In this document: piece after piece, positions 27,946 through 51,900 of the stretch
How the letters are laid out: each line of letters starts with the position of its first letter
Position numbering within the stretch: position 1 is the stretch's first letter
Source of the DNA: Heptranchias perlo
Lineage: Eukaryota
Direction: 5' to 3'
NCBI RefSeq assembly: GCF_035084215.1
Contig: NC_090335.1
Coordinates: 47,554,001 to 47,618,000, forward strand
Length of the DNA stretch: 64,000 bases
Program-made: the position numbers and the translations under genes
The notes under the pieces: model-generated
Told to the model about the DNA's origin: nothing
Databases searched by the model: none
The model's input: only the letters and a program-made list of their open reading frames with translations

Positions 27946-29689
27946 AATATTAATGCATTCAGTACAAAATTGGCAGTTGGACTTGAAGAGTTTTTAAGGA
28001 TACCTGAGGGTAGTAAATGGAAATTCGTATTGGTGCAGTGATGGTGCTCTCTTCCTGTGGGCTGAAGCAGAGAGAGCTTTACTCTTCACTCCGTCTGTAA
28101 TAGAAGCTTTTCGCAACTGGTGGGCACTACAAGATAACTCTAACTTCACAATCATTGTGTAACAAGTTACTCACAGATTTTCACTTTGTTTGGGCAGATC
28201 GTCAGGCCTTTATTAAGGGGATGCGCCTCACCCTGGGGAGCATTGGGATTTGCCCAATGACATTCTATTAACCTGTGCCATGCTTGATGAATGCAAAAAT
28301 GAGAGTGTTTCTTCCAAAGCATTAAGATCCTTTTTCCTGAAGCAATTCAAAAAGAAAACAGTAATTGGTCATAACTATTATAAATTTTCACCTAGAAATT
28401 TTAATTTTTAAAATGGTCTTTGGATGCTGATTACCAAGTTAAATTAGGAGGTCATGAAAGTCTTAAGTTGGTATGATATTAGACGTTATTATGTGGCTAT
28501 GCTAGGAGTGAGCTTGTACTTGGAGCCTTTACATTGTTAAGTGTTTATTAGTTTGGTGAGATTTAAGGCCATGGACTAGTGGTGCAGACGGTGTCAGACA
28601 TAAGGGTCTATTAGTTTGACTGTATGTTGTAATATTATTTGCTACAGTTTAGATTTTGATGTTTGCTAAATGTAGCTACCCTTTCCCCCCCCCCCCCCCC
28701 CCAAAATATGGATTTACTTTAGCAGGCTTTTACTTTCTGTTTTTGATTTACTCTGTCATACTGTTTCAGTTTGGTTAAGCATTAAGAGTGAAACTTGGCT
28801 ACTAGTGTGTGTGTCAAATAAGGAATAAAATCTCTTCAGAACCAAGAAGGGCAAGGAAGAAAAGGTTAGAAATAAATCAGTTGTTACTCGGGCTCTAACA
28901 ACATTTTGAGGCCGAGTTCCACAAGCCTTTGAAGCTTAGCAGAGCTTCTATTATGTTAGGATGATGCCACAGGGAAAGTGCTAGACAAATTACTTGTTCT
29001 CCCTAACAGTTTTAAATCATATAGCATCGGAACTTACACTTTTTAAATATGTTTTCCTTTTTTAAAAAAAAAACAAATCCCCATTCTAGTCTCCTGGGCT
29101 ACTTCTAGACCACTCTGCGTTTGTTGTTCTTGAGGCAATTGCTAAGGTATGCATTCCACTGAATTTCTTTTTCCTTACTCCCTCTGCACCTTAGGAAATG
29201 TCTGGCTTCTGAGTGACGCCTTTGCTCGGTGGCGTAGCTGAGTTTAAGAAGGCAATGGAATGGGATCAAACATGTCCCATCGCTCCTTGCTGCTTTGCTG
29301 TGTTTTAGTGTGCTGTGCCAATAATCAGACATCTTTTTAAAATTATGAACAAATTAGATGATAGTTTTCCTTTAAAACTTTGATAGTATTCTAGATAGGA
29401 AGCTTCAAAGCTAAAATACTAGACTTCACTATAGTCCTCATTTGTGCTTAGAGCTGCATTCAGAGGCTTTAACTTGAATTAGTGAAACCAGAGAAATTAT
29501 ACTAATTTTAACGGGGGGGGGGGGACAGAAACATGGCTACTGCTGGATTTCTTCCTGCCCCACCCCCGCTGCTCATGATCACAAGACAATAATGGATGAG
29601 GGAGGTCAATTGGTTCATCTTCGTTCACCCATGGGGAATGACCCTAAGTCCCCAAGTTGCAGAATCCAACTGGCCGTTTTTTGGATTTA

Positions 29690-30990
29690 CTTTTTTCATA
29701 CCGTTTATACTTTTCTATATACTTCTAATAAGATCATCTCTCATCCAAGTCTCTCCTTATACCTAAGTCTCCTAACACTAGGGCTCTGTCTTGTGACTCT
29801 TCTCTGCACTGCTTCCTATGCTTGAATGTTTCCGTTGTGTCTCAATGATCGTAGCTGGACACCGTAGTTAAAGTCTGGTCTGAGCAGAGCACTGTAAAAA
29901 ATTTGATTGACTTGTATTCTACTGTTTTGACTCTATAAAGTTCAACGTTTTGTTGATTGCTACTCTGCATTGGTTGGACATGTTAAGTATGAAATCTACT
30001 AAGACTCATGTTTTTTTCTCAACTTTGTCTTGGCTATTACACCACCATTCATCGAATATATATGTTGCCCACTTTTCCTTCCCATGTGTAGTATTTTACC
30101 CTGGCCAGCATCAAATTTCATCTGTTCTGACCATTTACATATTCTGTCCAGCTTACATTTAATGTCTGAGCTTCCTTCTCTGATTCCACTGCCTATCCTA
30201 GTTTCAATTTGCATTGGGTTTCTGAGTTCAAGTCATTGATGTAAATTAGAAACAGCAAAGGCCCCAACAATGAGCACTAGGGCATCCCTTTCAGTACTGC
30301 TTCCCACCCACTATGTAACTCCTGTAACAAGTACCTGTTGTTTTCTACCCTTCAGCCAAATTTTCATTCATACCCAAGATTTACCCTAAATTGCTACAGC
30401 TTTGAGCTTAATTAATAGCCTTTCATGTGGAACTTTGTCAAATGCATTCTAGAAGTCCCAGTACCACACGTTATAAGGCTTACCATAGTCCACTTGGGTC
30501 GTGACTTCCTCAAAGAAGTCAAGGAGGTTGGTTAGGAAGATCTCTTTGTTCTGAATCCATGTTAACTGGTGTTTACTAAGTTGTTGTACAGATTAAGTTC
30601 AAGTTTACTCATGATGATTAATTCAATTTTTTTTACATGGGATTTAAGTACATTGAATGGATCTGTAGTTTCCTGTTTCTGATTGAGTGGTTTTTTTGAA
30701 AATGGGCAACACATTGACCTGCTTCCAATATACTGGTCCAATGATGCCTTCATAATTGTCAATGCCTCACAAATCTCTTTCCTGGCCTTTTAGCACTAGG
30801 ATAAATACTGTCTATCCATGGGAATTTATTGTTTTTGAGCCTTTTAGCCCATCCAGGGCTTCTATCTCATTTATATCTGCCATTAGTTTTGCCTGGGTTA
30901 ACTCTGGGAAGGGTATCTTGCTCATATTTTCCCTTGTGAATACCTGGAGTTGATCATTTAGCATGTTTGCTATCCTGTGCTTATCCTCTG
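29690..30990 (-). mobile_element. Old CR1 RT fragment
   Basis: AFDKVPH and W..QMKF remnants. Confidence 0.7.
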
Positions 30991-31549
30991 TTTTGCACCC
31001 TGTTGCATCTCTTGTGGTTCTCGCCCCTCGTCTGACTGATCATTTATTGTTATAGTACTGAAGGCACTTATGTTTTGCATCTGCAGCTATGTTTTTTTAA
31101 AGATTTTTTTTCCCTCTGATTACCTTTTTATCATGCTTCAGTGCTATTCTCGTTGAGCATCACGTACTTGTAACTTCTTTGTGTGACTGCTCTTCACATT
31201 GTTCTGAAACATTTATTTGTTACCTCTTTTTCAGCTCTGTTTAACAACCATGTGGAGAGTAGTTGTTAGGTCTGTTCAGAGAGTGGGAGTTGGACAGTAG
31301 TCACATGTTGATTTGCCCTCCAACAACAGTGTCAGTTGGAGCTCTAATTTGGAATAAAACAAAATAACCAGGAAGGTTATAAATGGCCTAAATTTGTAGA
31401 ATAATGATACAGGAGCTGAGTTACATTCCTGCTCCCACCCCTAACTTGGCAATTCTAGTCATGATGTGGAGATGCCGGTGATGGACTGGGGTTGACAATT
31501 GTAAACAATTTTACAACACCAAGTTATAGTCCAGCAATTTTATTTTAAA

Positions 31550-31588
31550 TTCACAAGCTTTCGGAGGCTTCCTCCTTCGTCAGGTGAA
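31550..31588 (-). ncRNA. Minimal type I hammerhead ribozyme
   Basis: exact reverse complement of 31638-31676. Confidence 0.82.
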
Positions 31589-31637
31589 CGATGTGAAAAT
31601 GAAATCCTCGAAAAATGAGGATTTCATTTTCACATCG

Positions 31638-31676
31638 TTCACCTGACGAAGGAGGAAGCCTCCGAAAGCTTGTGAA
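31638..31676 (+). ncRNA. Minimal type I hammerhead ribozyme
   Basis: ttcac-CTGACGA-a-ggagg aag cctcc-GAAA-gctt-gtgaa; 5-bp stems I and II. Confidence 0.82.
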
Positions 31677-32399
31677 TTTAAAATAAAATTGCTGGACTAT
31701 AACTTGGTGTTGTAAAATTGTTTACAATTGGCAATTCTAGTTTGACATTTCAAGAAGGGTATTGGTTAGAACAGCTCTGAAGTGTGTGTGCACAATAATG
31801 ACAATGTACAAGCCGGTCACAGCAGTTCAGATAGTGTCAGATGTAGTACTCTACAGCTTATTAAAGTATATAGGTGGCATAAACTTTGTTTTAAGACAGA
31901 CTGATGTATTGATATAAATATTTGGCCACTTCAAAATGTGACTTCAACTGGCTAGGTACTTCAAAATGTTTTAGCTCTCATCTGGTGTAGCAATTAAGGC
32001 ACCTGGTCAAAATCCTAAAACGTGAAACACAGTGCCAAGTTAACTTTTTTTTCCCCCACTGAACCCTGAGTTTGTGATACTACCCTGAATTCCTTCAATG
32101 TTACGTGATACCCTAAGTAGAACCCTTCCCTATGATGCTACCTGATGATTATGTTCATTTGTAACAATTGTCTGTTGAAGTGCAAAGTGCCTGACTCGAG
32201 TGAAATGTGCATTTAGGTTAAAAAAAATTTAAATTCCACGCCTTTTTTAAAACTGCATAATTTCAAAAGATATTTAATGGTAGATGTATGCAAAAGTCAT
32301 TAATTGTTTGAAACCTTGTGATGTTGCCAGATTATATAAAAGATCGATTATAAAGGGATACAATACAATCTGTTATCTTCCAGTGTGATATTTTGACTC

Positions 32400-32640
32400 A
32401 TTTTAGTAGCACCGGCCTCTGAGTCAAGAGGTTGTGGTTTCAAGCTGCGCTCCAGAATTTAAGCACAGAATTTAGGCTGATGCTTCAGTGCAGTACTGAC
32501 GGTATTGTACTGTTGGAGTTGTCATCCTACGGATTAGACATTAAAGCGAGGCACTGTCTATTTGTTCATTCGGATGTAAAATATTCCATGGCAGTATTTG
32601 AAGAACAGGGAGTTCTCAGTATTCTGACCAATATTTATGG
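32400..32640 (+). mobile_element. Deu-type SINE, diverged
   Basis: similar to 3655-3920. Confidence 0.7.
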
Positions 32641-32709
32641 CACAGAAGGAAGCCATTTGCCCCATCGTATCTGTGCTGGAAATGTTAGTGATCTCTTTTT
32701 AAAAAAAAA

Positions 32710-33560
32710 ATTCAACTAGATTAGTCTAACATGACCTACCTTTCACATCCATGTTGACTCTTTGATTTGCTGATACTTGTCCAGTAATTTCCCCACAATT
32801 GATGTTAAACTGACAGATTTGTAGTTACCTGGTTTCTCCCTCCCTCCCTTCTTAAATAATGGAGTGTCATTTACAATTTTATAATCCATAGGCACAATTT
32901 CTAAATCTAGAGAGCATATGGAAAATTATGACAAATGCACCTGCAATTTCCTCACCTATTTTTAATACTCTGGGGTGGAACCCACCAGGTCCTGAGGATT
33001 TGTCTGTCTTAAGTCCTGTTATTTTCTCCATTTTTAAGATTTATCTACTGTATTATATCAAGTTCATCTTTACTTATTTCTAGGTTCTCTTGTACCACTG
33101 GTATTTTGTTCTCTGTGAAAACTGATAGAAAGTACTAATTTAATGTCTGCCATTTCCTTATTATCCATTGTAGTCTCACCTGTATCCATCTTTAATGGGC
33201 CCACATTCTACTTTTTCTCTTAAAATACTTCTTTAAAAACCTTTGCTGTTAGCTTTGATATCCCTTTCAAGTTTATTTTCATATTTCCTTTTGGCACCTC
33301 TTACCTTTTTTATAACCCTTTGTTGCTTTGGGCACTAGATGATTACTACCCCGGAGGTTCTGCTTATTAAACTAGAATTTATCTCCTTGAAATCTCTTAG
33401 ACAGGAGTAGATTCAAGGTTCTGCAATGTCATTGGTTCCCAAATGAACCACAACTTCCGGCTGCTCACCCTCCCATTCCAGAACCTTTTGTATTTGCTCT
33501 GTGATGTCCCGAACCCTGGCACTCGGGAAGCAACATATCATTTAGGTCTCTGGATCTACA
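32710..33560 (-). mobile_element. Old CR1 fragments (ORF1/ORF2)
   Basis: decayed NYxxVSLTS and LPSARV motifs. Confidence 0.6.
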
Positions 33561-46975: not shown

Positions 46976-48743
46976 TGCATTAAATAAATTTAATGCATGT
47001 ATCTATGTGAGGAGATCCCCACCATCTTTGGCAACCACCCCATAACCTTCCTGCCTAATCATTTTGACTCCGAACTCTAACTGCTTGAAATGGGGTAATG
47101 ATCTTCTCATTTATTAATGTGAGGCAGAGATAAGATGTGCATTTATACTGCAGGTACTGATTCCAGCCAGGCAGTACCCTATTTATATTGTCTGACTCCA
47201 AATGGAATTCTCTGCCCAGGAGAGGAATCTACACATGCAGAGTTCCCCCTCCAACTGTTTAAATTTTAGATGTTTTCAGAGCAGGAGCATCTGCCTTAAT
47301 ACATTTACATCAACTCTGAATAAGTTCAAAACAAACCCCTTGAGCACTTTTTAAATTCAAATTGCCACTGCACTTCATTTAGACCGCATGTGGTGTCAGA
47401 TCCTAGTGTTGTAAAATGCTCTCTTCATTGGGCTCGCGCATAGACTCCATAGTTTCATTTTAGTGAAGTTGGAAAACTGAGACAAAGACACCCCTATCTG
47501 GATGAACATTTGGCTCTTCATCTCATCTACCCTCTCCCTGAACAGGCTGTTGAGATACAAGGAGCTTGATGGTCTAGTTATCATGCAATGGATCGAAAAA
47601 ATCCATTACTCCATATTTTATGCACTTCTGTTCATTGAATCGGAACACTATTCATCAGGTCCAGTTGCAGTAGGTCACCCCAACACTAAACTCTTTTTGA
47701 CTGGCCCAATATTCAAAAATAATAACTTGCATTTATATGGTTCCTTTAACATAAAAAAAATGTCCCCAGGTGCTTAGATTACCTTTTAACTAAAGTTAGG
47801 ACAAACAAAACCAAAGCATTATTTTGCACCTAGTTACATCTCATAGGACATCAGATTGGAGTTAGTGTTATTCCCTTTTGCAGACTGGACTGCCTGGCTG
47901 CTGTTATCATGTCTGAAATGTTAATGCATGCAATTTAGTCATTTCTATTGTGTTTTGAGTATAAAGACCACTCTGGAAAATTGTGCAAAGAAAACCAGCA
48001 GTTATTAGCCATTGCCACTTTGTTCGCAAAAGATGCAAGGACTGTTATATCTTGTTTGATTGTCCAATTCAGAAGAAATGGCTTTATGTGGAAAGTTCTA
48101 GAAGGTAAATGTTGTAGATTTAGTGAAAACATATTTGCTATGTGAGTGTGTGACTTGTATCCTACATGTAAAATCCTTCTCTGAACATGGACAAGTGAAA
48201 GCTCTTGAAACTGCTGTATGACCTATTTTCTATCAAGAGATTATAAGAAGTAACTTTCTGAAAATGGGTATCTTAACCCTGTATGGAATGGTTCATAGTC
48301 TCACGTTAAGTATTATACCAAATAGTATCTTGCTGATCTCGCTGCTTCTGTGTATTATTTATTGATCAACAAACCTGGAAAAGTCGTTTTAGCCTATACT
48401 GAGTGATACAACATTGTGTGTTGGCGTTGCCCTCTTTCCCCACCGCCCCCCCCCCCCCCCAACCAAATCTTCAGAGGTGACAGGAGAGCATGGTAGGCAT
48501 TGAGTATTCTGCAATGAGCGATTTACCACAAATCAAGAGCTTTTGGTTTGTAACACTTTTTTTATGGAAATTGTTGTCTAGTCACGAACACAAAAAAGGC
48601 ATTGGGGAAGAGAGAACTCTTAACTGTCTTAGTTTTAGTCATACTGTTTGTTTAGCTGGTGGCTGACTTGTTAATAACCCATTTATTTCAGATACAAGGA
48701 ATCTTACAACACCAGGTTATAGTCCAACTGTTTTATTTGAAAA

Positions 48744-48780
48744 TCACAAGCTTTCGGAGACTTTCTCCTTCGTCAGGTGA
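48744..48780 (-). ncRNA. Minimal type I hammerhead ribozyme
   Basis: minus strand tcac-CTGACGA-a-ggaga aag tctcc-GAAA-gctt-gtga. Confidence 0.8.
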
Positions 48781-48935
48781 GTGTGGGATTCGGATTCCAT
48801 GGAAGGTTGCTGCATTTATAGTCAGAGAACAATACCTGGTGATTAGATAATCTTTCCAACTGCCCGTTGGTAATCACCAGGTATTGTTCTCTGACTATAA
48901 ATGCGGTAACCTTCCATGGAATCCGAATCCCACAC

Positions 48936-48972
48936 TCACCTGACGAAGGAGAAAGCCTCCGAAAGCTTGTGA
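48936..48972 (+). ncRNA. Minimal type I hammerhead ribozyme
   Basis: tcac-CTGACGA-a-ggag aaagc ctcc-GAAA-gctt-gtga. Confidence 0.8.
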
Positions 48973-51900
48973 TTTTCAAATACAACACCAGGTTATAGTC
49001 CAACTGTTTTAAGATTCCTTACATTTGTTAACCCCAGTCCATCACCGGCATCTCCACGTCACATTTATTTCAGGCAACAGAATGGCCTTATCTGCATTAG
49101 GGTTATTGCATGGAAAAGTTGGTATCTAGAAAGATGAGATCAAATGAGTCAAATATTTTTCTTCACTAAAACCTGTCTTGAAACATTCCCAGATATGTTT
49201 TGTGCAGTGTTATAGAATCGTCGAATGTTATAGCACAGAAATAGACTAGACTATTCAGCCCACCAAGTCTGTGCAGGTGTTTTTTTTCTGCCCCCCCCCC
49301 CCCCCCCCCCAGCAAAACCACTTAATCTAATCCAATTTTCCTGCTTACACTCCATATGTTTTTTTGATAGTTCTCCCTTTTTCAAGCAGCTATTTTAATA
49401 TTTTTCTGTTTGCTTCCTTCCTCCTTGCTGTTAGCAAAGCAATCTAGAGATATTTGTTTATATTAATGGATTGCTGTGGTGATGAGATTTTTACACTGTT
49501 CAGGCTCTGCAGGTTTTCTTGGTTTGTGAAACAAGCAAGAAGGACAATGGTGGGAGACTTTGTATGGCTGGTTCACACTTGACTGGAAGCAAATGGCAAC
49601 ATAGTCCAGTACTTCATGTAGCGTACTTGATGGATAAGAAGACTACGCTGAAAATCCACAGTATAAATGTATGCTTAATACAACGTAGATTATGTATCAT
49701 TACAGTATTCCATAAAGCACATAAAAATGTGACTTTATAATTTGCATAATGGTGATCTTCATGCACTCAGCTGCTGCTTACAGTTGCCATGACTGTCATG
49801 GGGTCCTGCTAATGTTCTGCCACCACGGACCTTGCCAGTACTGCAGTTCTACTGATACATGTATTTGGATTTATTTTGTGATTCATGTACAAAGTGTAAG
49901 GGTAACAGTGTGAAGTCCAATAGATGAAATACAATCTTGGTTAGTTCTGGTGATCTTAGACCACTTATGCTTTGCAGAATAGAGCTTGTGCTCGGTCGGC
50001 TTCTGGTTGATAAGCAGCATGGATTTCAAAATACTAGTTTTCATCTATAGAACACCAATAAAACTTAAATTTTACAGAAGGCATAGCAGTTTATTCAATA
50101 ACATAGCTGGCACCTTTTTCACATACTTAATATCCCTTTGTGGCTCCAGCTTTTTAAAAAAAAATCAGAAATGGTGAGTAGTTGAATTGTTTTGTGAGAT
50201 GGACTCCGTGCCATGGGTATAATGCAAACTTGCCATATCCAACCCCTCAAAGTCTGTGTGACTTCTCATGTAGTCCACTCCCACAGCTGCTCTGTTTCTA
50301 TTTGCCCTGACATTTTTTATGTTGGTAGCGATACTGGATTTGCCTATTTGAATATCTGAGGCATGGGTCTGCTCGCTTTTAGATGGATTCAAGATATAGC
50401 CACCAAATGTGGGAGAAATCCTGAGAACAACCTGCCAGGCCCACCAAATGCGAATGTTAGCAGCATAAAAATATCTCTACAACCAGAAATGTGGTGGTGT
50501 CTGCAGAACTGGCTCCATCCAACCTCTGACCTGTCCTGAGCAAGACAAAGCTTAATCTCTAAGATCAGTTGAGAAAATAGGGAGTTCATTTACCTCAATA
50601 TTAATAGGGAAGCAATTGCTTTTCCTGTTTGTTTCTCCCTCCCCAGTATTGGAGCTTATCACTCAATCTTAGTGGCAGCTATCCTCCTTGAAAAATTATT
50701 GCCATCACTTTCTAGCTGTGTTTGTAAATGCACAACAATGACTGTTGCATCGAAGGTATTGTGCCACTTGAATGTAAGGTTGCCATGATGCACCAATTAT
50801 CAATGTTGGTCTCTTCTTGGTGCCTTTCTCCCCCGACATCAGCAGTCCCCCTTAAATACAAATTCTAGTATTACACAAGAAATTAAAAACAGGAATTTGC
50901 TGTAGATTGATATAATTGTACAACTTGATAAATGTCAGTGCAAAAAATGGAAGTGCGCAAAGGATCTAAACCACTTCAATAAACCTAGGGGGTTGGGCAT
51001 TTTATGTAGTTGCCCATCCCCCTACCTGATGCCACCTTAGCTATAAGACCTGTATCTCTTTGTTCATTTCTCTTTGTGCCAAATAGCTATACAGTTCCAC
51101 CTGAGTAATCTAATCTTGCACAGCCCTGGTAACCTGGGAAACTAATTCTTAATTTACAATAAAGTTTGGCATGGAGGACTGTCCACAGTTCATAAATTGT
51201 CTTTATTCACAACTGCTCTTTGTTCTTGGTTGTTTTCTTGGGAGGCAAGACAGCTCCCTTCTCCTTTCACCTGTGCTGTTCAAGCAGCAGGCATTTTCTA
51301 CAGTTTTGCTGCCTCCACCCTTTTTGTTCCTTGTTATTGGCACAATGATCTTTTTTAAATAAAATAGAAGCAAAATTGAAGTTGGAGTGATAATAGATCG
51401 TTTGAAGATCTTACTTTAGTCATTTTTTAGTTTTCAATTCAGAAATTTGTGTTTAAGAAGATGAAGATTACAGAATGGCAAGGAAGTGAGGGTGTTTTAT
51501 TTTCAAAAGCACAAACTTTATATGAACTGGCCATATAATGCTTTTAACTGAAGGCTTCACATTGGGTGCTCTGGAAAAACCAATTGTGGGGTGTGCTTAA
51601 ATTTTGGGTGTACACTGGGTAACACTATTGCTGTTAAGTAATTAGATTCCTCCCATTACAGTGTTGACTCATTAATTCTTTCAGGTGTGTATAATATGGT
51701 ATGTGGATTTTTTAATGAGTACAGAGTCTGGAAATTCTCTCAGCAAGTGATGACATTTTATGGACGGCCATGGCCTTTTCTTCCAAAAGTTAATTACATT
51801 AGACCTTTATGTGTGACTAATAATGGTCTGTGATTTGTCCAGAGTCCAAAAATACTTGCTTGTTTATCACATTTCTACAAATGAACACAGTATTAAGTTT

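What the first reader, a model, noticed from the sequence alone, without database searches (positions are those of the whole stretch)
31460..31730. Perfect 114-bp palindrome carrying a hammerhead on each strand, flanked by a TSD
Seen: a 271-bp non-coding insertion made only of PLE 3'-end sequence, with two exact inverted arms, a 7-nt loop, one ~35-nt PLE tail and an 11-bp (up to 14 with microhomology) TSD. Whichever strand is transcribed, the RNA contains the antisense copy first and then a sense hammerhead, so the ribozyme would be locked in a long hairpin. Inverted pseudo-LTRs are an established product of PLE insertion, but here the whole element is reduced to that ribozyme palindrome.
Basis: partly seen in the sequence, partly recalled or inferred. 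Interest (0 to 1): 0.8.

Follow-up and report, generated by a model that had tools for sequence, protein, structure and literature searches.

The report
Minimal fold-back Penelope retroelement insertion
This is a real 271-bp insertion made of two inverted, 5'-truncated copies of the 3' end of a shark Penelope-like retrotransposon, each carrying a minimal hammerhead ribozyme motif; it is the standard head-to-head product of Penelope insertion in its smallest form and is most likely dead on arrival.

Summary
There are exact 114-nt inverted arms (31496-31609 and 31617-31730), a 7-nt spacer, and a 36-nt tail on the left arm only (31460-31495). A perfect 14-nt target-site duplication flanks the insertion; 11 nt of it is unambiguous and 3 nt is microhomology. 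A complete Penelope-type minimal hammerhead lies on each strand.

The same hammerhead-plus-tail module ends a 5'-truncated Penelope-like element at 5696-7159, whose ORF encodes the C-terminal part of the RT region (downstream of the RVT_1 domain) plus a GIY-YIG endonuclease. So the arms are Penelope 3' ends.

Short-read contigs from the same sample cross both junctions and cover the spacer. That argues against an assembly fold-back, but the runs may be the assembly's own source.

Head-to-head inverted truncated copies, a 30-40-bp tail at only one end, a TSD, and paired minimal hammerheads on opposite strands are all published Penelope features.

My reading is target-primed reverse transcription from the tailed end, followed by a turn-around of the polymerase on its own cDNA (snap-back). 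The spacer's first 3-4 nt continue the tailed arm, and the two truncation points coincide to within about 4 nt.

In any transcript the ribozyme is buried in a 114-bp duplex and lacks a sense partner to dimerise with.

First-stage notes of this scan list similar fold-backs elsewhere in this genome; I could not check them. Interest is low to moderate.

The parts
31446..31459 (.). Left copy of the target-site duplication TTGGCAATTCTAGT
   Evidence: Exact 14-nt direct repeat with 31728-31741
31460..31495 (-). 36-nt 'tail': the outer 3' terminus of the Penelope-like element, read on the minus strand. Present on this arm only.
   Evidence: Matches the conserved terminus of the copies ending at 7159 and 49061. 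In runs X1 and X2, dozens of family contigs diverge into unrelated flanks at 31460-31462 (164 contigs in X1, 125 in X2) (table 7).
31496..31609 (-). Left arm: 5'-truncated element 3' region, sense on the minus strand
   Evidence: Exact reverse complement of 31617-31730
31550..31588 (-). Minimal type-I hammerhead motif on the minus strand; predicted cleavage between 31555 and 31554
   Evidence: Descriptor match
31610..31616 (.). 7-nt spacer GAAAAAT. The first 3-4 nt continue the element sequence of the tailed arm; the last 3 nt match neither arm nor the family consensus.
   Evidence: Family contigs match up to 31612/31613 and then continue with other element sequence (table 7)
31617..31730 (+). 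Right arm: the same 5'-truncated element 3' region, sense on the plus strand. It ends at the inner, untailed terminus.
   Evidence: The untailed end of the second fold-back (48692/48696) falls within 3-7 nt of the same element position.
31638..31676 (+). Minimal type-I hammerhead motif: TTCAC / CTGACGA / A / GGAGG-AAG-CCTCC / GAA / AGCT / T^ / GTGAA. Predicted cleavage after 31671.
   Evidence: Descriptor match, 0 of 200 simulated windows. The features match the published PLE min-HHR (PMC4209133).
31728..31741 (.). Right copy of the target-site duplication; its first 3 nt overlap the arm (microhomology)
5696..7159 (+). Reference copy in the same window: a 5'-truncated Penelope-like element. 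It has the C-terminal RT region and GIY-YIG ORF (homology ends 6781, stop codon ends 6787), a 3' region with the min-HHR at 7034-7070, and the tail ending at 7159.
   Evidence: tblastn against shark proteins; homologues carry RVT_1 and GIY-YIG; nhmmer and alignment
48692..49061 (.). Second, older fold-back of a different subfamily. The tailed arm is on the right, with a 12-nt TSD CATTTATTTCAG (48680-48691 and 49062-49073) and a junction about 55 nt further upstream.

Best explanation
A single abortive insertion of a Penelope-like element (PLE) in a cartilaginous-fish genome.

Shown: a staggered target break (11-14-nt TSD); both outer ends of the insertion are element 3' termini; the two heads meet at the centre; the tail is on one arm only.

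Inferred sequence of events:
1. The plus-strand 3'-OH at 31459 primed reverse transcription at the outer start site, which gives the tail.
2. After about 154 nt the polymerase left the RNA and turned round on its own nascent cDNA (snap-back, with about 3 untemplated or slipped nucleotides). It copied the cDNA back as the sense arm.
3. That strand ended at the element's inner terminus and was joined to the other target end through 3 nt of microhomology (TTG).
4. Repair then filled in the TSD.

The hammerheads are passengers. This minimal type needs a second sense copy to form the active double hammerhead. In a transcript of either strand the only sense copy is preceded by its perfect antisense, so it folds into a 114-bp duplex and should not cleave. 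The copy is therefore a dead-on-arrival by-product. If transcribed, it would at most yield a long dsRNA hairpin.
For: Anatomy.

PLE identity of the arms: the same hammerhead-plus-tail module ends a copy whose ORF is 89% identical to shark proteins with RVT_1, and aligns over the GIY-YIG domain of P0088.

min-HHR: all published diagnostic features are present, and the descriptor hits only the five arms (PMC4209133).

Polarity and snap-back:
- The spacer's first 3-4 nt continue the family sequence of the tailed arm (loose ends at 31612/31613), so the tailed arm reaches further in.
- The two truncation points coincide within about 4 nt at an arbitrary internal position, although the family consensus runs on for at least 30 nt.
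- Of the 19 distinct fold-back joints shown from other copies in the contig sets (324 joints in all), 11 are symmetric about 31613 to within 6 nt, and the 12 between-sequences shown are 1-11 nt (tables 5 and 5c).

Literature:
- Inverted pLTR, one tail and a TSD, with palindromes at the inverted junction read as self-priming (PMC3846280).
- A tail of 30-40 bp at one end only (PMC8557442).
- Two RT start sites define the tail, and the hammerhead is not needed for insertion (PMC11167929).

Ribozyme locked: the hairpin is -227.5 kcal/mol, z = -34. Forcing helices I and II costs +68.5 kcal/mol on either strand. The double-hammerhead pairing of two sense copies is feasible at -20.7 kcal/mol.
Against: - Snap-back does not by itself explain why the returning strand stops at the inner terminus instead of copying the tail. 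I have to assume a protein block or endonuclease resolution there.
- The last 3 nt of the spacer are unexplained.
- The fold-back joints in table 5 come from contigs of an extremely deep repeat, where rare library chimeras could also pass the abundance filter. Only 15 joints and 12 between-sequences, out of 324 joints, were shown.
- The purified lizard PLE protein cleaves and extends both target strands (PMC11167929), which would allow a two-sided model.
- No cleavage or expression data exist for this locus.
Confidence: 0.6

Rival explanations
1. Two-sided target-primed reverse transcription. The PLE dimer cuts both strands. Each 3'-OH primes its own cDNA, one at the outer start site and one at the inner. 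One polymerase then jumps from its RNA onto the 3' end of the other cDNA, joining the two head to head.
For: The lizard PLE protein cleaves and extends both strands and uses two adjacent start sites that delimit the tail (PMC11167929). Both outer ends here are canonical termini, one tailed and one untailed. The TTG microhomology at the right junction fits priming as well as joining.
Against: Two independent cDNAs would have to stop within about 4 nt of each other at a non-special internal position, since the family sequence continues beyond it. Synchronous synthesis would predict a 36-nt offset because of the tail, and that is not seen. Eleven of the 19 distinct joints shown in the genome are also near-symmetric.
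Confidence: 0.2
2. Retrotransposition of a pre-existing hairpin transcript. A fold-back copy elsewhere was transcribed, and its sense arm and tail were recognised by PLE reverse transcriptase. The whole hairpin was then copied into this site. This would make it a non-autonomous 'hairpin' lineage, as in the related note's 'ambisense hammerhead retroelement'.
For: The minus-strand transcript would end in a sense arm plus tail, the region used for priming. Contigs cover the spacer position 31616, and two X2 contigs carry a variant with one extra C there (table 4). That may indicate another locus with a near-identical centre.
Against: The two fold-backs in the window differ in junction position, spacer and subfamily. 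The contig sets show 324 different joints rather than a few dominant ones. The 5' end of the insertion coincides with a canonical inner terminus, which this model needs as a coincidence. Contig depths cannot be read as copy numbers (tool warning).
Confidence: 0.1
3. Artefact or later DNA-level event: either an assembly or read fold-back, or a palindrome formed after an ordinary single-copy insertion by a replication template switch.
For: PLE inverted structures are known to trouble assemblies (PMC8557442, PMC3846280). The only read evidence may come from the sample used for the assembly.
Against: There is a perfect TSD at the exact boundaries, and both flanks continue on the same strand. Contigs of two runs cross each junction and cover the spacer. 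The untailed end sits at a canonical element terminus, which a random DNA-level duplication would not give.
Confidence: 0.05

Closest known systems
Canonical endonuclease-positive Penelope-like element insertions with an inverted 5'-truncated copy, a one-sided 30-40-bp tail and a TSD (Evgen'ev and Arkhipova 2005, as cited in PMC8557442; Arkhipova et al. 2013, PMC3846280; Craig et al. 2021, PMC8557442)
   Same: Head-to-head orientation with the 3' ends outward, a tail on one arm only (36 nt), a short TSD, a hammerhead in the repeated region, and a palindromic junction.
   Different: There is no ORF and no direct pLTR between the arms. Both arms are truncated to 114 nt, so the whole insertion is just the inverted pair. 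The arms are still 100% identical.
Minimal type-I hammerheads of metazoan PLEs (Cervera and de la Pena 2014, PMC4209133; dimer cleavage by Lunse et al. 2016, as cited in PMC6765202)
   Same: CUGANGA and GAA core, an extra nucleotide before G10.1-C11.1, a 5-bp helix II, a 5-bp helix I, and a palindromic AGCU in place of helix III. That paper also reports pairs of motifs 100-700 bp apart on opposite strands.
   Different: This is a cartilaginous-fish family. Here the two motifs are 54 nt apart and lie inside one perfect hairpin. Activity was not tested.
Non-LTR retrozymes (Cervera and de la Pena 2020, PMC7229834; Li et al. 2026, bioRxiv 10.64898/2026.07.22.740005)
   Same: Short, non-coding, PLE-related sequences carrying type-I hammerheads.
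   Different: Retrozymes are direct (tandem) repeats whose paired sense hammerheads release a circular RNA. This element has inverted copies and cannot do that.
LINE-1 twin priming, and snap-back or hairpin-primed second-strand synthesis by reverse transcriptases
   Same: A turn-around of DNA synthesis during target-primed reverse transcription gives inverted element sequence within a single TSD.
   Different: Twin priming inverts a different segment of the element, so the arms are not copies of the same sequence. Here the arms are exact mirror copies with a 7-nt turn.

Membership tests
Penelope-like element (EN+ canonical) insertion | The sequence belongs to an element encoding a PLE-type reverse transcriptase with a C-terminal GIY-YIG endonuclease | tested here: met
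   The same hammerhead-plus-tail module ends the copy at 5696-7159. Its ORF is 89% identical to shark protein P0001 (RVT_1) and aligns across the GIY-YIG domain of P0088. The 271-bp insertion itself has no ORF.
Penelope-like element (EN+ canonical) insertion | Inverted, 5'-truncated copy arranged head to head | tested here: met
   Exact 114-nt arms with 3' termini outward and truncated heads at the centre
Penelope-like element (EN+ canonical) insertion | Optional 30-40-bp tail, often at one end only | tested here: met
   A 36-nt tail at 31460-31495 on the left arm only. The untailed ends of the two fold-backs fall within 3-7 nt of each other.
Penelope-like element (EN+ canonical) insertion | Target-site duplication | tested here: met
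   14/14-nt direct repeat at the exact boundaries
PLE-type minimal hammerhead ribozyme | Conserved core (C3-A9, G12-A14, A15.1-U16.1, H17), an extra nucleotide before G10.1-C11.1, palindromic 15.2-16.2, and a helix I of 4-5 bp | tested here: met
   Descriptor match at 31638-31676 (+) and 31550-31588 (-), with 0 of 200 simulated windows matching
PLE-type minimal hammerhead ribozyme | Match to curated hammerhead covariance models (Rfam) | tested here: not met
   No hammerhead family appears even at E up to 10; only sub-threshold long-hairpin miRNA models hit. This is expected, because the minimal variant lacks helix III (PMC4209133).
PLE-type minimal hammerhead ribozyme | Covariation that keeps the helices | tested here: inconclusive
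   Among five arms, one compensatory change occurs in helix II (G-C to A-U at the loop-closing pair) and one copy has it broken. There are too few copies to decide.
PLE-type minimal hammerhead ribozyme | Self-cleavage, as a dimer | not testable with these tools
   Only energy estimates are available: the double-hammerhead pairing is -20.7 kcal/mol
Non-LTR retrozyme | Two or more sense hammerheads in direct (tandem) repeats | tested here: not met
   The two motifs lie on opposite strands, and there is no tandem repeat in 29500-33500
microRNA precursor (MIR821, MIR7807 and similar) | Score at or above the family's gathering threshold | tested here: not met
   137 bits against a threshold of 249, and 76 against 90. 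These are generic matches of any long perfect hairpin.

The most novel reading that the evidence does not exclude
Fold-back mini-insertions like this one are not just debris. When transcribed inside host genes, their perfect hairpins could be processed into small RNAs against the hammerhead and tail region of active Penelope elements, giving a self-generated silencing trigger. Alternatively, some of them could propagate as a non-autonomous hairpin lineage.
Probability: 0.07. Interest if true: 0.6.

Novelty: new member of a known kind. Interest (0 to 1): 0.22.

Why it matters
As an object it is ordinary: one more Penelope fold-back in a genome full of them. Its value is as a clean, undecayed record of one insertion event.

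- Because the arms are exact, the spacer is only 7 nt and the tail is on one side, it fixes the order of events: the tailed arm was made first and the untailed arm was copied from it.
- It therefore argues for a polymerase turn-around rather than two independent primings. This bears on the still unresolved question of how Penelope elements make their inverted repeats.
- A census of such minimal fold-backs in this genome could settle that question without any experiment.

Tried and rejected
- Rfam at gathering and at relaxed thresholds: no hammerhead family, only sub-threshold long-hairpin miRNA models, which I reject as generic.
- Pfam on the window ORF gave nothing, even at E up to 10. The local copy does not report the newer families PF26215 and PF28514 that are precomputed for its homologues, so I established the link through homologues instead.
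- A PDB sequence search of the ORF was blank.
- Two metagenome scans, one with a hammerhead pattern and one with a tail pattern, found nothing.
- The Lunse 2016 and Pyatkov 2004 papers are not held.
- I tried to polarise the second fold-back by aligning its 25-nt spacer to the copy at about 6900-7060. That copy is too diverged upstream of the hammerhead, so the result is inconclusive.
- Contig depths over the repeat and over the joints were not used as copy numbers, following the tool's warning.

Full report
**Observation**

The plus strand at 31446-31741 reads as follows:
- TSD (TTGGCAATTCTAGT)
- a 36-nt tail
- a 114-nt arm
- the spacer GAAAAAT
- a 114-nt arm
- TSD

The arms 31496-31609 and 31617-31730 are exact reverse complements with 0 mismatches. 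The 14-nt direct repeat is exact. Its first three bases, TTG, are also the last three of the right arm, so the duplication is 11 nt for certain and up to 14 nt with microhomology. As RNA the region folds into one hairpin of -227.5 kcal/mol, z = -34.5 against shuffles.

**The hammerheads**

Rfam finds no hammerhead family, at gathering thresholds or at E up to 10. It finds only sub-threshold matches to models of long plant miRNA hairpins, which any perfect palindrome would give.

I wrote a descriptor from the published definition of the Penelope minimal hammerhead. It requires helix I of 4-5 bp, CUGANGA, an optional extra nucleotide, helix II starting with G10.1-C11.1, GAA, a palindromic A..U helix III, and H17. 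It matches + 31638-31676 and - 31550-31588, plus three further sites at 7034-7070 (+), 48936-48972 (+) and 48744-48780 (-). It matches nowhere else in the window and in none of 200 simulated windows.

The motif reads TTCAC / CTGACGA / A / GGAGG-AAG-CCTCC / GAA / AGCT / T^ / GTGAA. That gives every feature listed as diagnostic by Cervera and de la Pena (PMC4209133):
- an enlarged helix II
- a short helix I
- an extra base between A9 and G10.1
- G10.1-C11.1
- palindromic 15.2-16.2

Among the five copies, the loop-closing pair of helix II changes from G-C to A-U in two copies and is broken in one. That is too little for a covariation test.

**Are the arms Penelope 3' ends?**

A profile of the arms finds only three loci in the window: this one, a second fold-back at 48692-49061, and a single copy ending at 7159.

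The single copy is continuous with an ORF whose Penelope homology spans 5696-6781. The ORF is 89% identical to a shark protein that carries RVT_1. It is 33% identical over 384 residues to P0088, which carries RVT_1 and GIY-YIG, and the alignment runs through the GIY-YIG domain (VVYLIRC...YIGET...R..H). The best relatives are all from sharks.

That copy places the hammerhead about 250 nt after the stop codon and about 90 nt before the terminus ...CACCGGCATCTCCACATCA. This conserved last stretch is the tail of the finding. In the contig sets of runs X1 and X2, dozens of family contigs (164 and 125) diverge into unrelated sequence at exactly 31460-31462. The left boundary is therefore the family's canonical outer terminus (table 7).

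The untailed right arm ends at the element position ...ACAATTG|TCAACCCC. The untailed arm of the second fold-back ends 3-7 nt from the same position. This fits the published 'tail': a 30-40-bp extension often present at only one end (PMC8557442, PMC3846280). It corresponds to the stretch between two adjacent start sites of reverse transcription (PMC11167929).

**Reality of the locus**

Only Logan contigs were available, and the four best runs may be the assembly's own sample.
- In two of those runs, one contig runs 31000-31479 and another 31706 or 31707-32200, each without a mismatch. The flanks are therefore joined to the tail and to the untailed arm.
- Contigs also cover spacer position 31616.
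- No contig breaks at 31459/31460, and no empty-site joint appears among the 15 joints shown of 324. There is thus no sign of an empty allele, though the evidence is weak.
- With the TSD and with both flanks on the same strand, an assembly fold-back is very unlikely.
- The element family is enormously repeated: over 18,000 contigs were laid in one run.
- A contig from another species is identical over 104 nt (table 8).

**Mechanism**

Both outer ends are 3' termini and the truncated heads meet in the middle. This is the head-to-head arrangement described as the commonest for Penelope (PMC3846280).

Three observations polarise the event:
1. Family contigs match the left, tailed arm through 31612/31613 and then continue with further element sequence (TGAAATCGCATTT...). 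The first 3-4 nt of the spacer therefore belong to the tailed arm, and the element was not at its natural 5' end there.
2. The truncation points of the two arms therefore differ by only about 4 nt, at an arbitrary internal position.
3. The contig sets contain 324 other fold-back joints. Of the 19 distinct ones shown, 11 are symmetric about 31613 to within 6 nt, and the 12 between-sequences shown are 1-11 nt. Examples are 31566/31660 with AAAAT, 31587/31639 with CAC, and 31595/31632 with G (tables 5 and 5c).

The simplest account is one continuous plus-strand synthesis. It is primed from 31459 and templated first by the RNA (tail and arm, about 154 nt). After a turn with about 3 extra nucleotides, it is templated by the nascent cDNA itself. 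The new 3' end is then joined to the other target end through TTG.

Two independent primings on the two strands are allowed by the in vitro behaviour of a lizard PLE (PMC11167929). They would need both cDNAs to stop at the same place by chance, and synchronous synthesis would give a 36-nt offset. I rate snap-back at about 0.6 and two-sided priming at about 0.2.

Three points remain unexplained or weak:
- why the returning strand ends at the inner terminus
- the origin of the last 3 nt of the spacer
- with a repeat this deep, some joints could be library chimeras

**Function**

The minimal hammerhead has no helix III of its own and is thought to act as a double hammerhead of two sense copies (PMC4209133, PMC6765202). 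The pairing is feasible here at -20.7 kcal/mol.

In a transcript of either strand there is only one sense copy, and it is made after its perfect antisense. Forcing helices I and II costs +68.5 kcal/mol relative to the hairpin.

The hammerhead is in any case dispensable for insertion in vitro (PMC11167929). The surroundings hold no convincing exon, only LINE-like fragments, and no tandem repeat. Whether the locus is intronic or transcribed could not be tested: the runs guessed to be RNA cover only the repeated part.

**Comparison and novelty**

Every element of the structure is published:
- an inverted 5'-truncated copy, a tail at one end and a TSD (PMC3846280, PMC8557442)
- palindromes at the inverted junction, read as self-priming (PMC3846280)
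- paired min-HHRs 100-700 bp apart on opposite strands (PMC4209133)

It is not a retrozyme, because those need direct repeats. The two fold-backs in this window differ in junction (about 26 against about 80 nt upstream of the core), in spacer (7 against about 25 nt) and in subfamily. They are separate events, which speaks against a single propagating hairpin element.

First-stage notes of this scan list further fold-backs on other pieces of this genome, from a 98-bp hairpin to a 3.7-kb palindrome with a 9-nt spacer. I could not check them. If correct, they fit a turn-around at variable distance.

**Limits**

Two metagenome scans were blank, and two key papers are not held. No census beyond the window and no long-read check was therefore possible.

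**Verdict**

This is a real, young, minimal head-to-head Penelope insertion: a new member of a known kind. It is useful mainly as a clean footprint of the insertion mechanism.

Noticed in passing
window 48981-49011 versus 48705-48735: In the second fold-back, a 31-nt segment of the right arm is inverted relative to the family. It is 100% identical in direct orientation to the left arm, while the rest of the arms are about 84-90% alike. This looks like a later strand-switch or conversion between the arms of the palindrome.
   Followed up: partly
window 5552-5695: The ORF that continues into the Penelope RT-C-terminal and GIY-YIG region starts 48 codons upstream of where Penelope homology begins (5696). 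Another note reads this as a fusion to a transposase N-terminus. I only saw that the element is 5'-truncated at about 5696.
   Followed up: no
window 48446-48461 and 49292-49312: Two long poly-C tracts lie about 850 bp apart and bracket the second fold-back. They may be the ends of another repeat into which it inserted.
   Followed up: no
window 32743-33031 (-) and 2903-3274 (+): Short ORFs with LINE-type reverse-transcriptase-like peptide motifs, judged by eye. No Pfam family was found for the ORF at 2903-3274, and the one at 32743-33031 was not scanned. The neighbourhood of the finding looks like repeat-rich non-coding DNA.
   Followed up: no
window 31463-31566, run X10 (another species): A contig from a different organism is identical to the tail and arm over 104 nt. 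The contig from that run that crosses 31613 carries the same upstream continuation, and one breaking at 31612 carries a related variant. This subfamily is therefore shared, nearly unchanged, between species.
   Followed up: no
window 31451-31737, runs X5-X8: Runs guessed to be RNA hold the repeated part at high depth, about 13-fold higher over the tail end than at the centre, but not the unique flanks. This could mean abundant transcripts of Penelope 3' ends, or simply DNA. It cannot be decided from contigs.
   Followed up: no
tool behaviour: The local Pfam library reports no family for the window's Penelope ORF or for P0002, although PF26215 is precomputed for P0002 and PF26215 and PF28514 for most other homologues.
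   Followed up: partly
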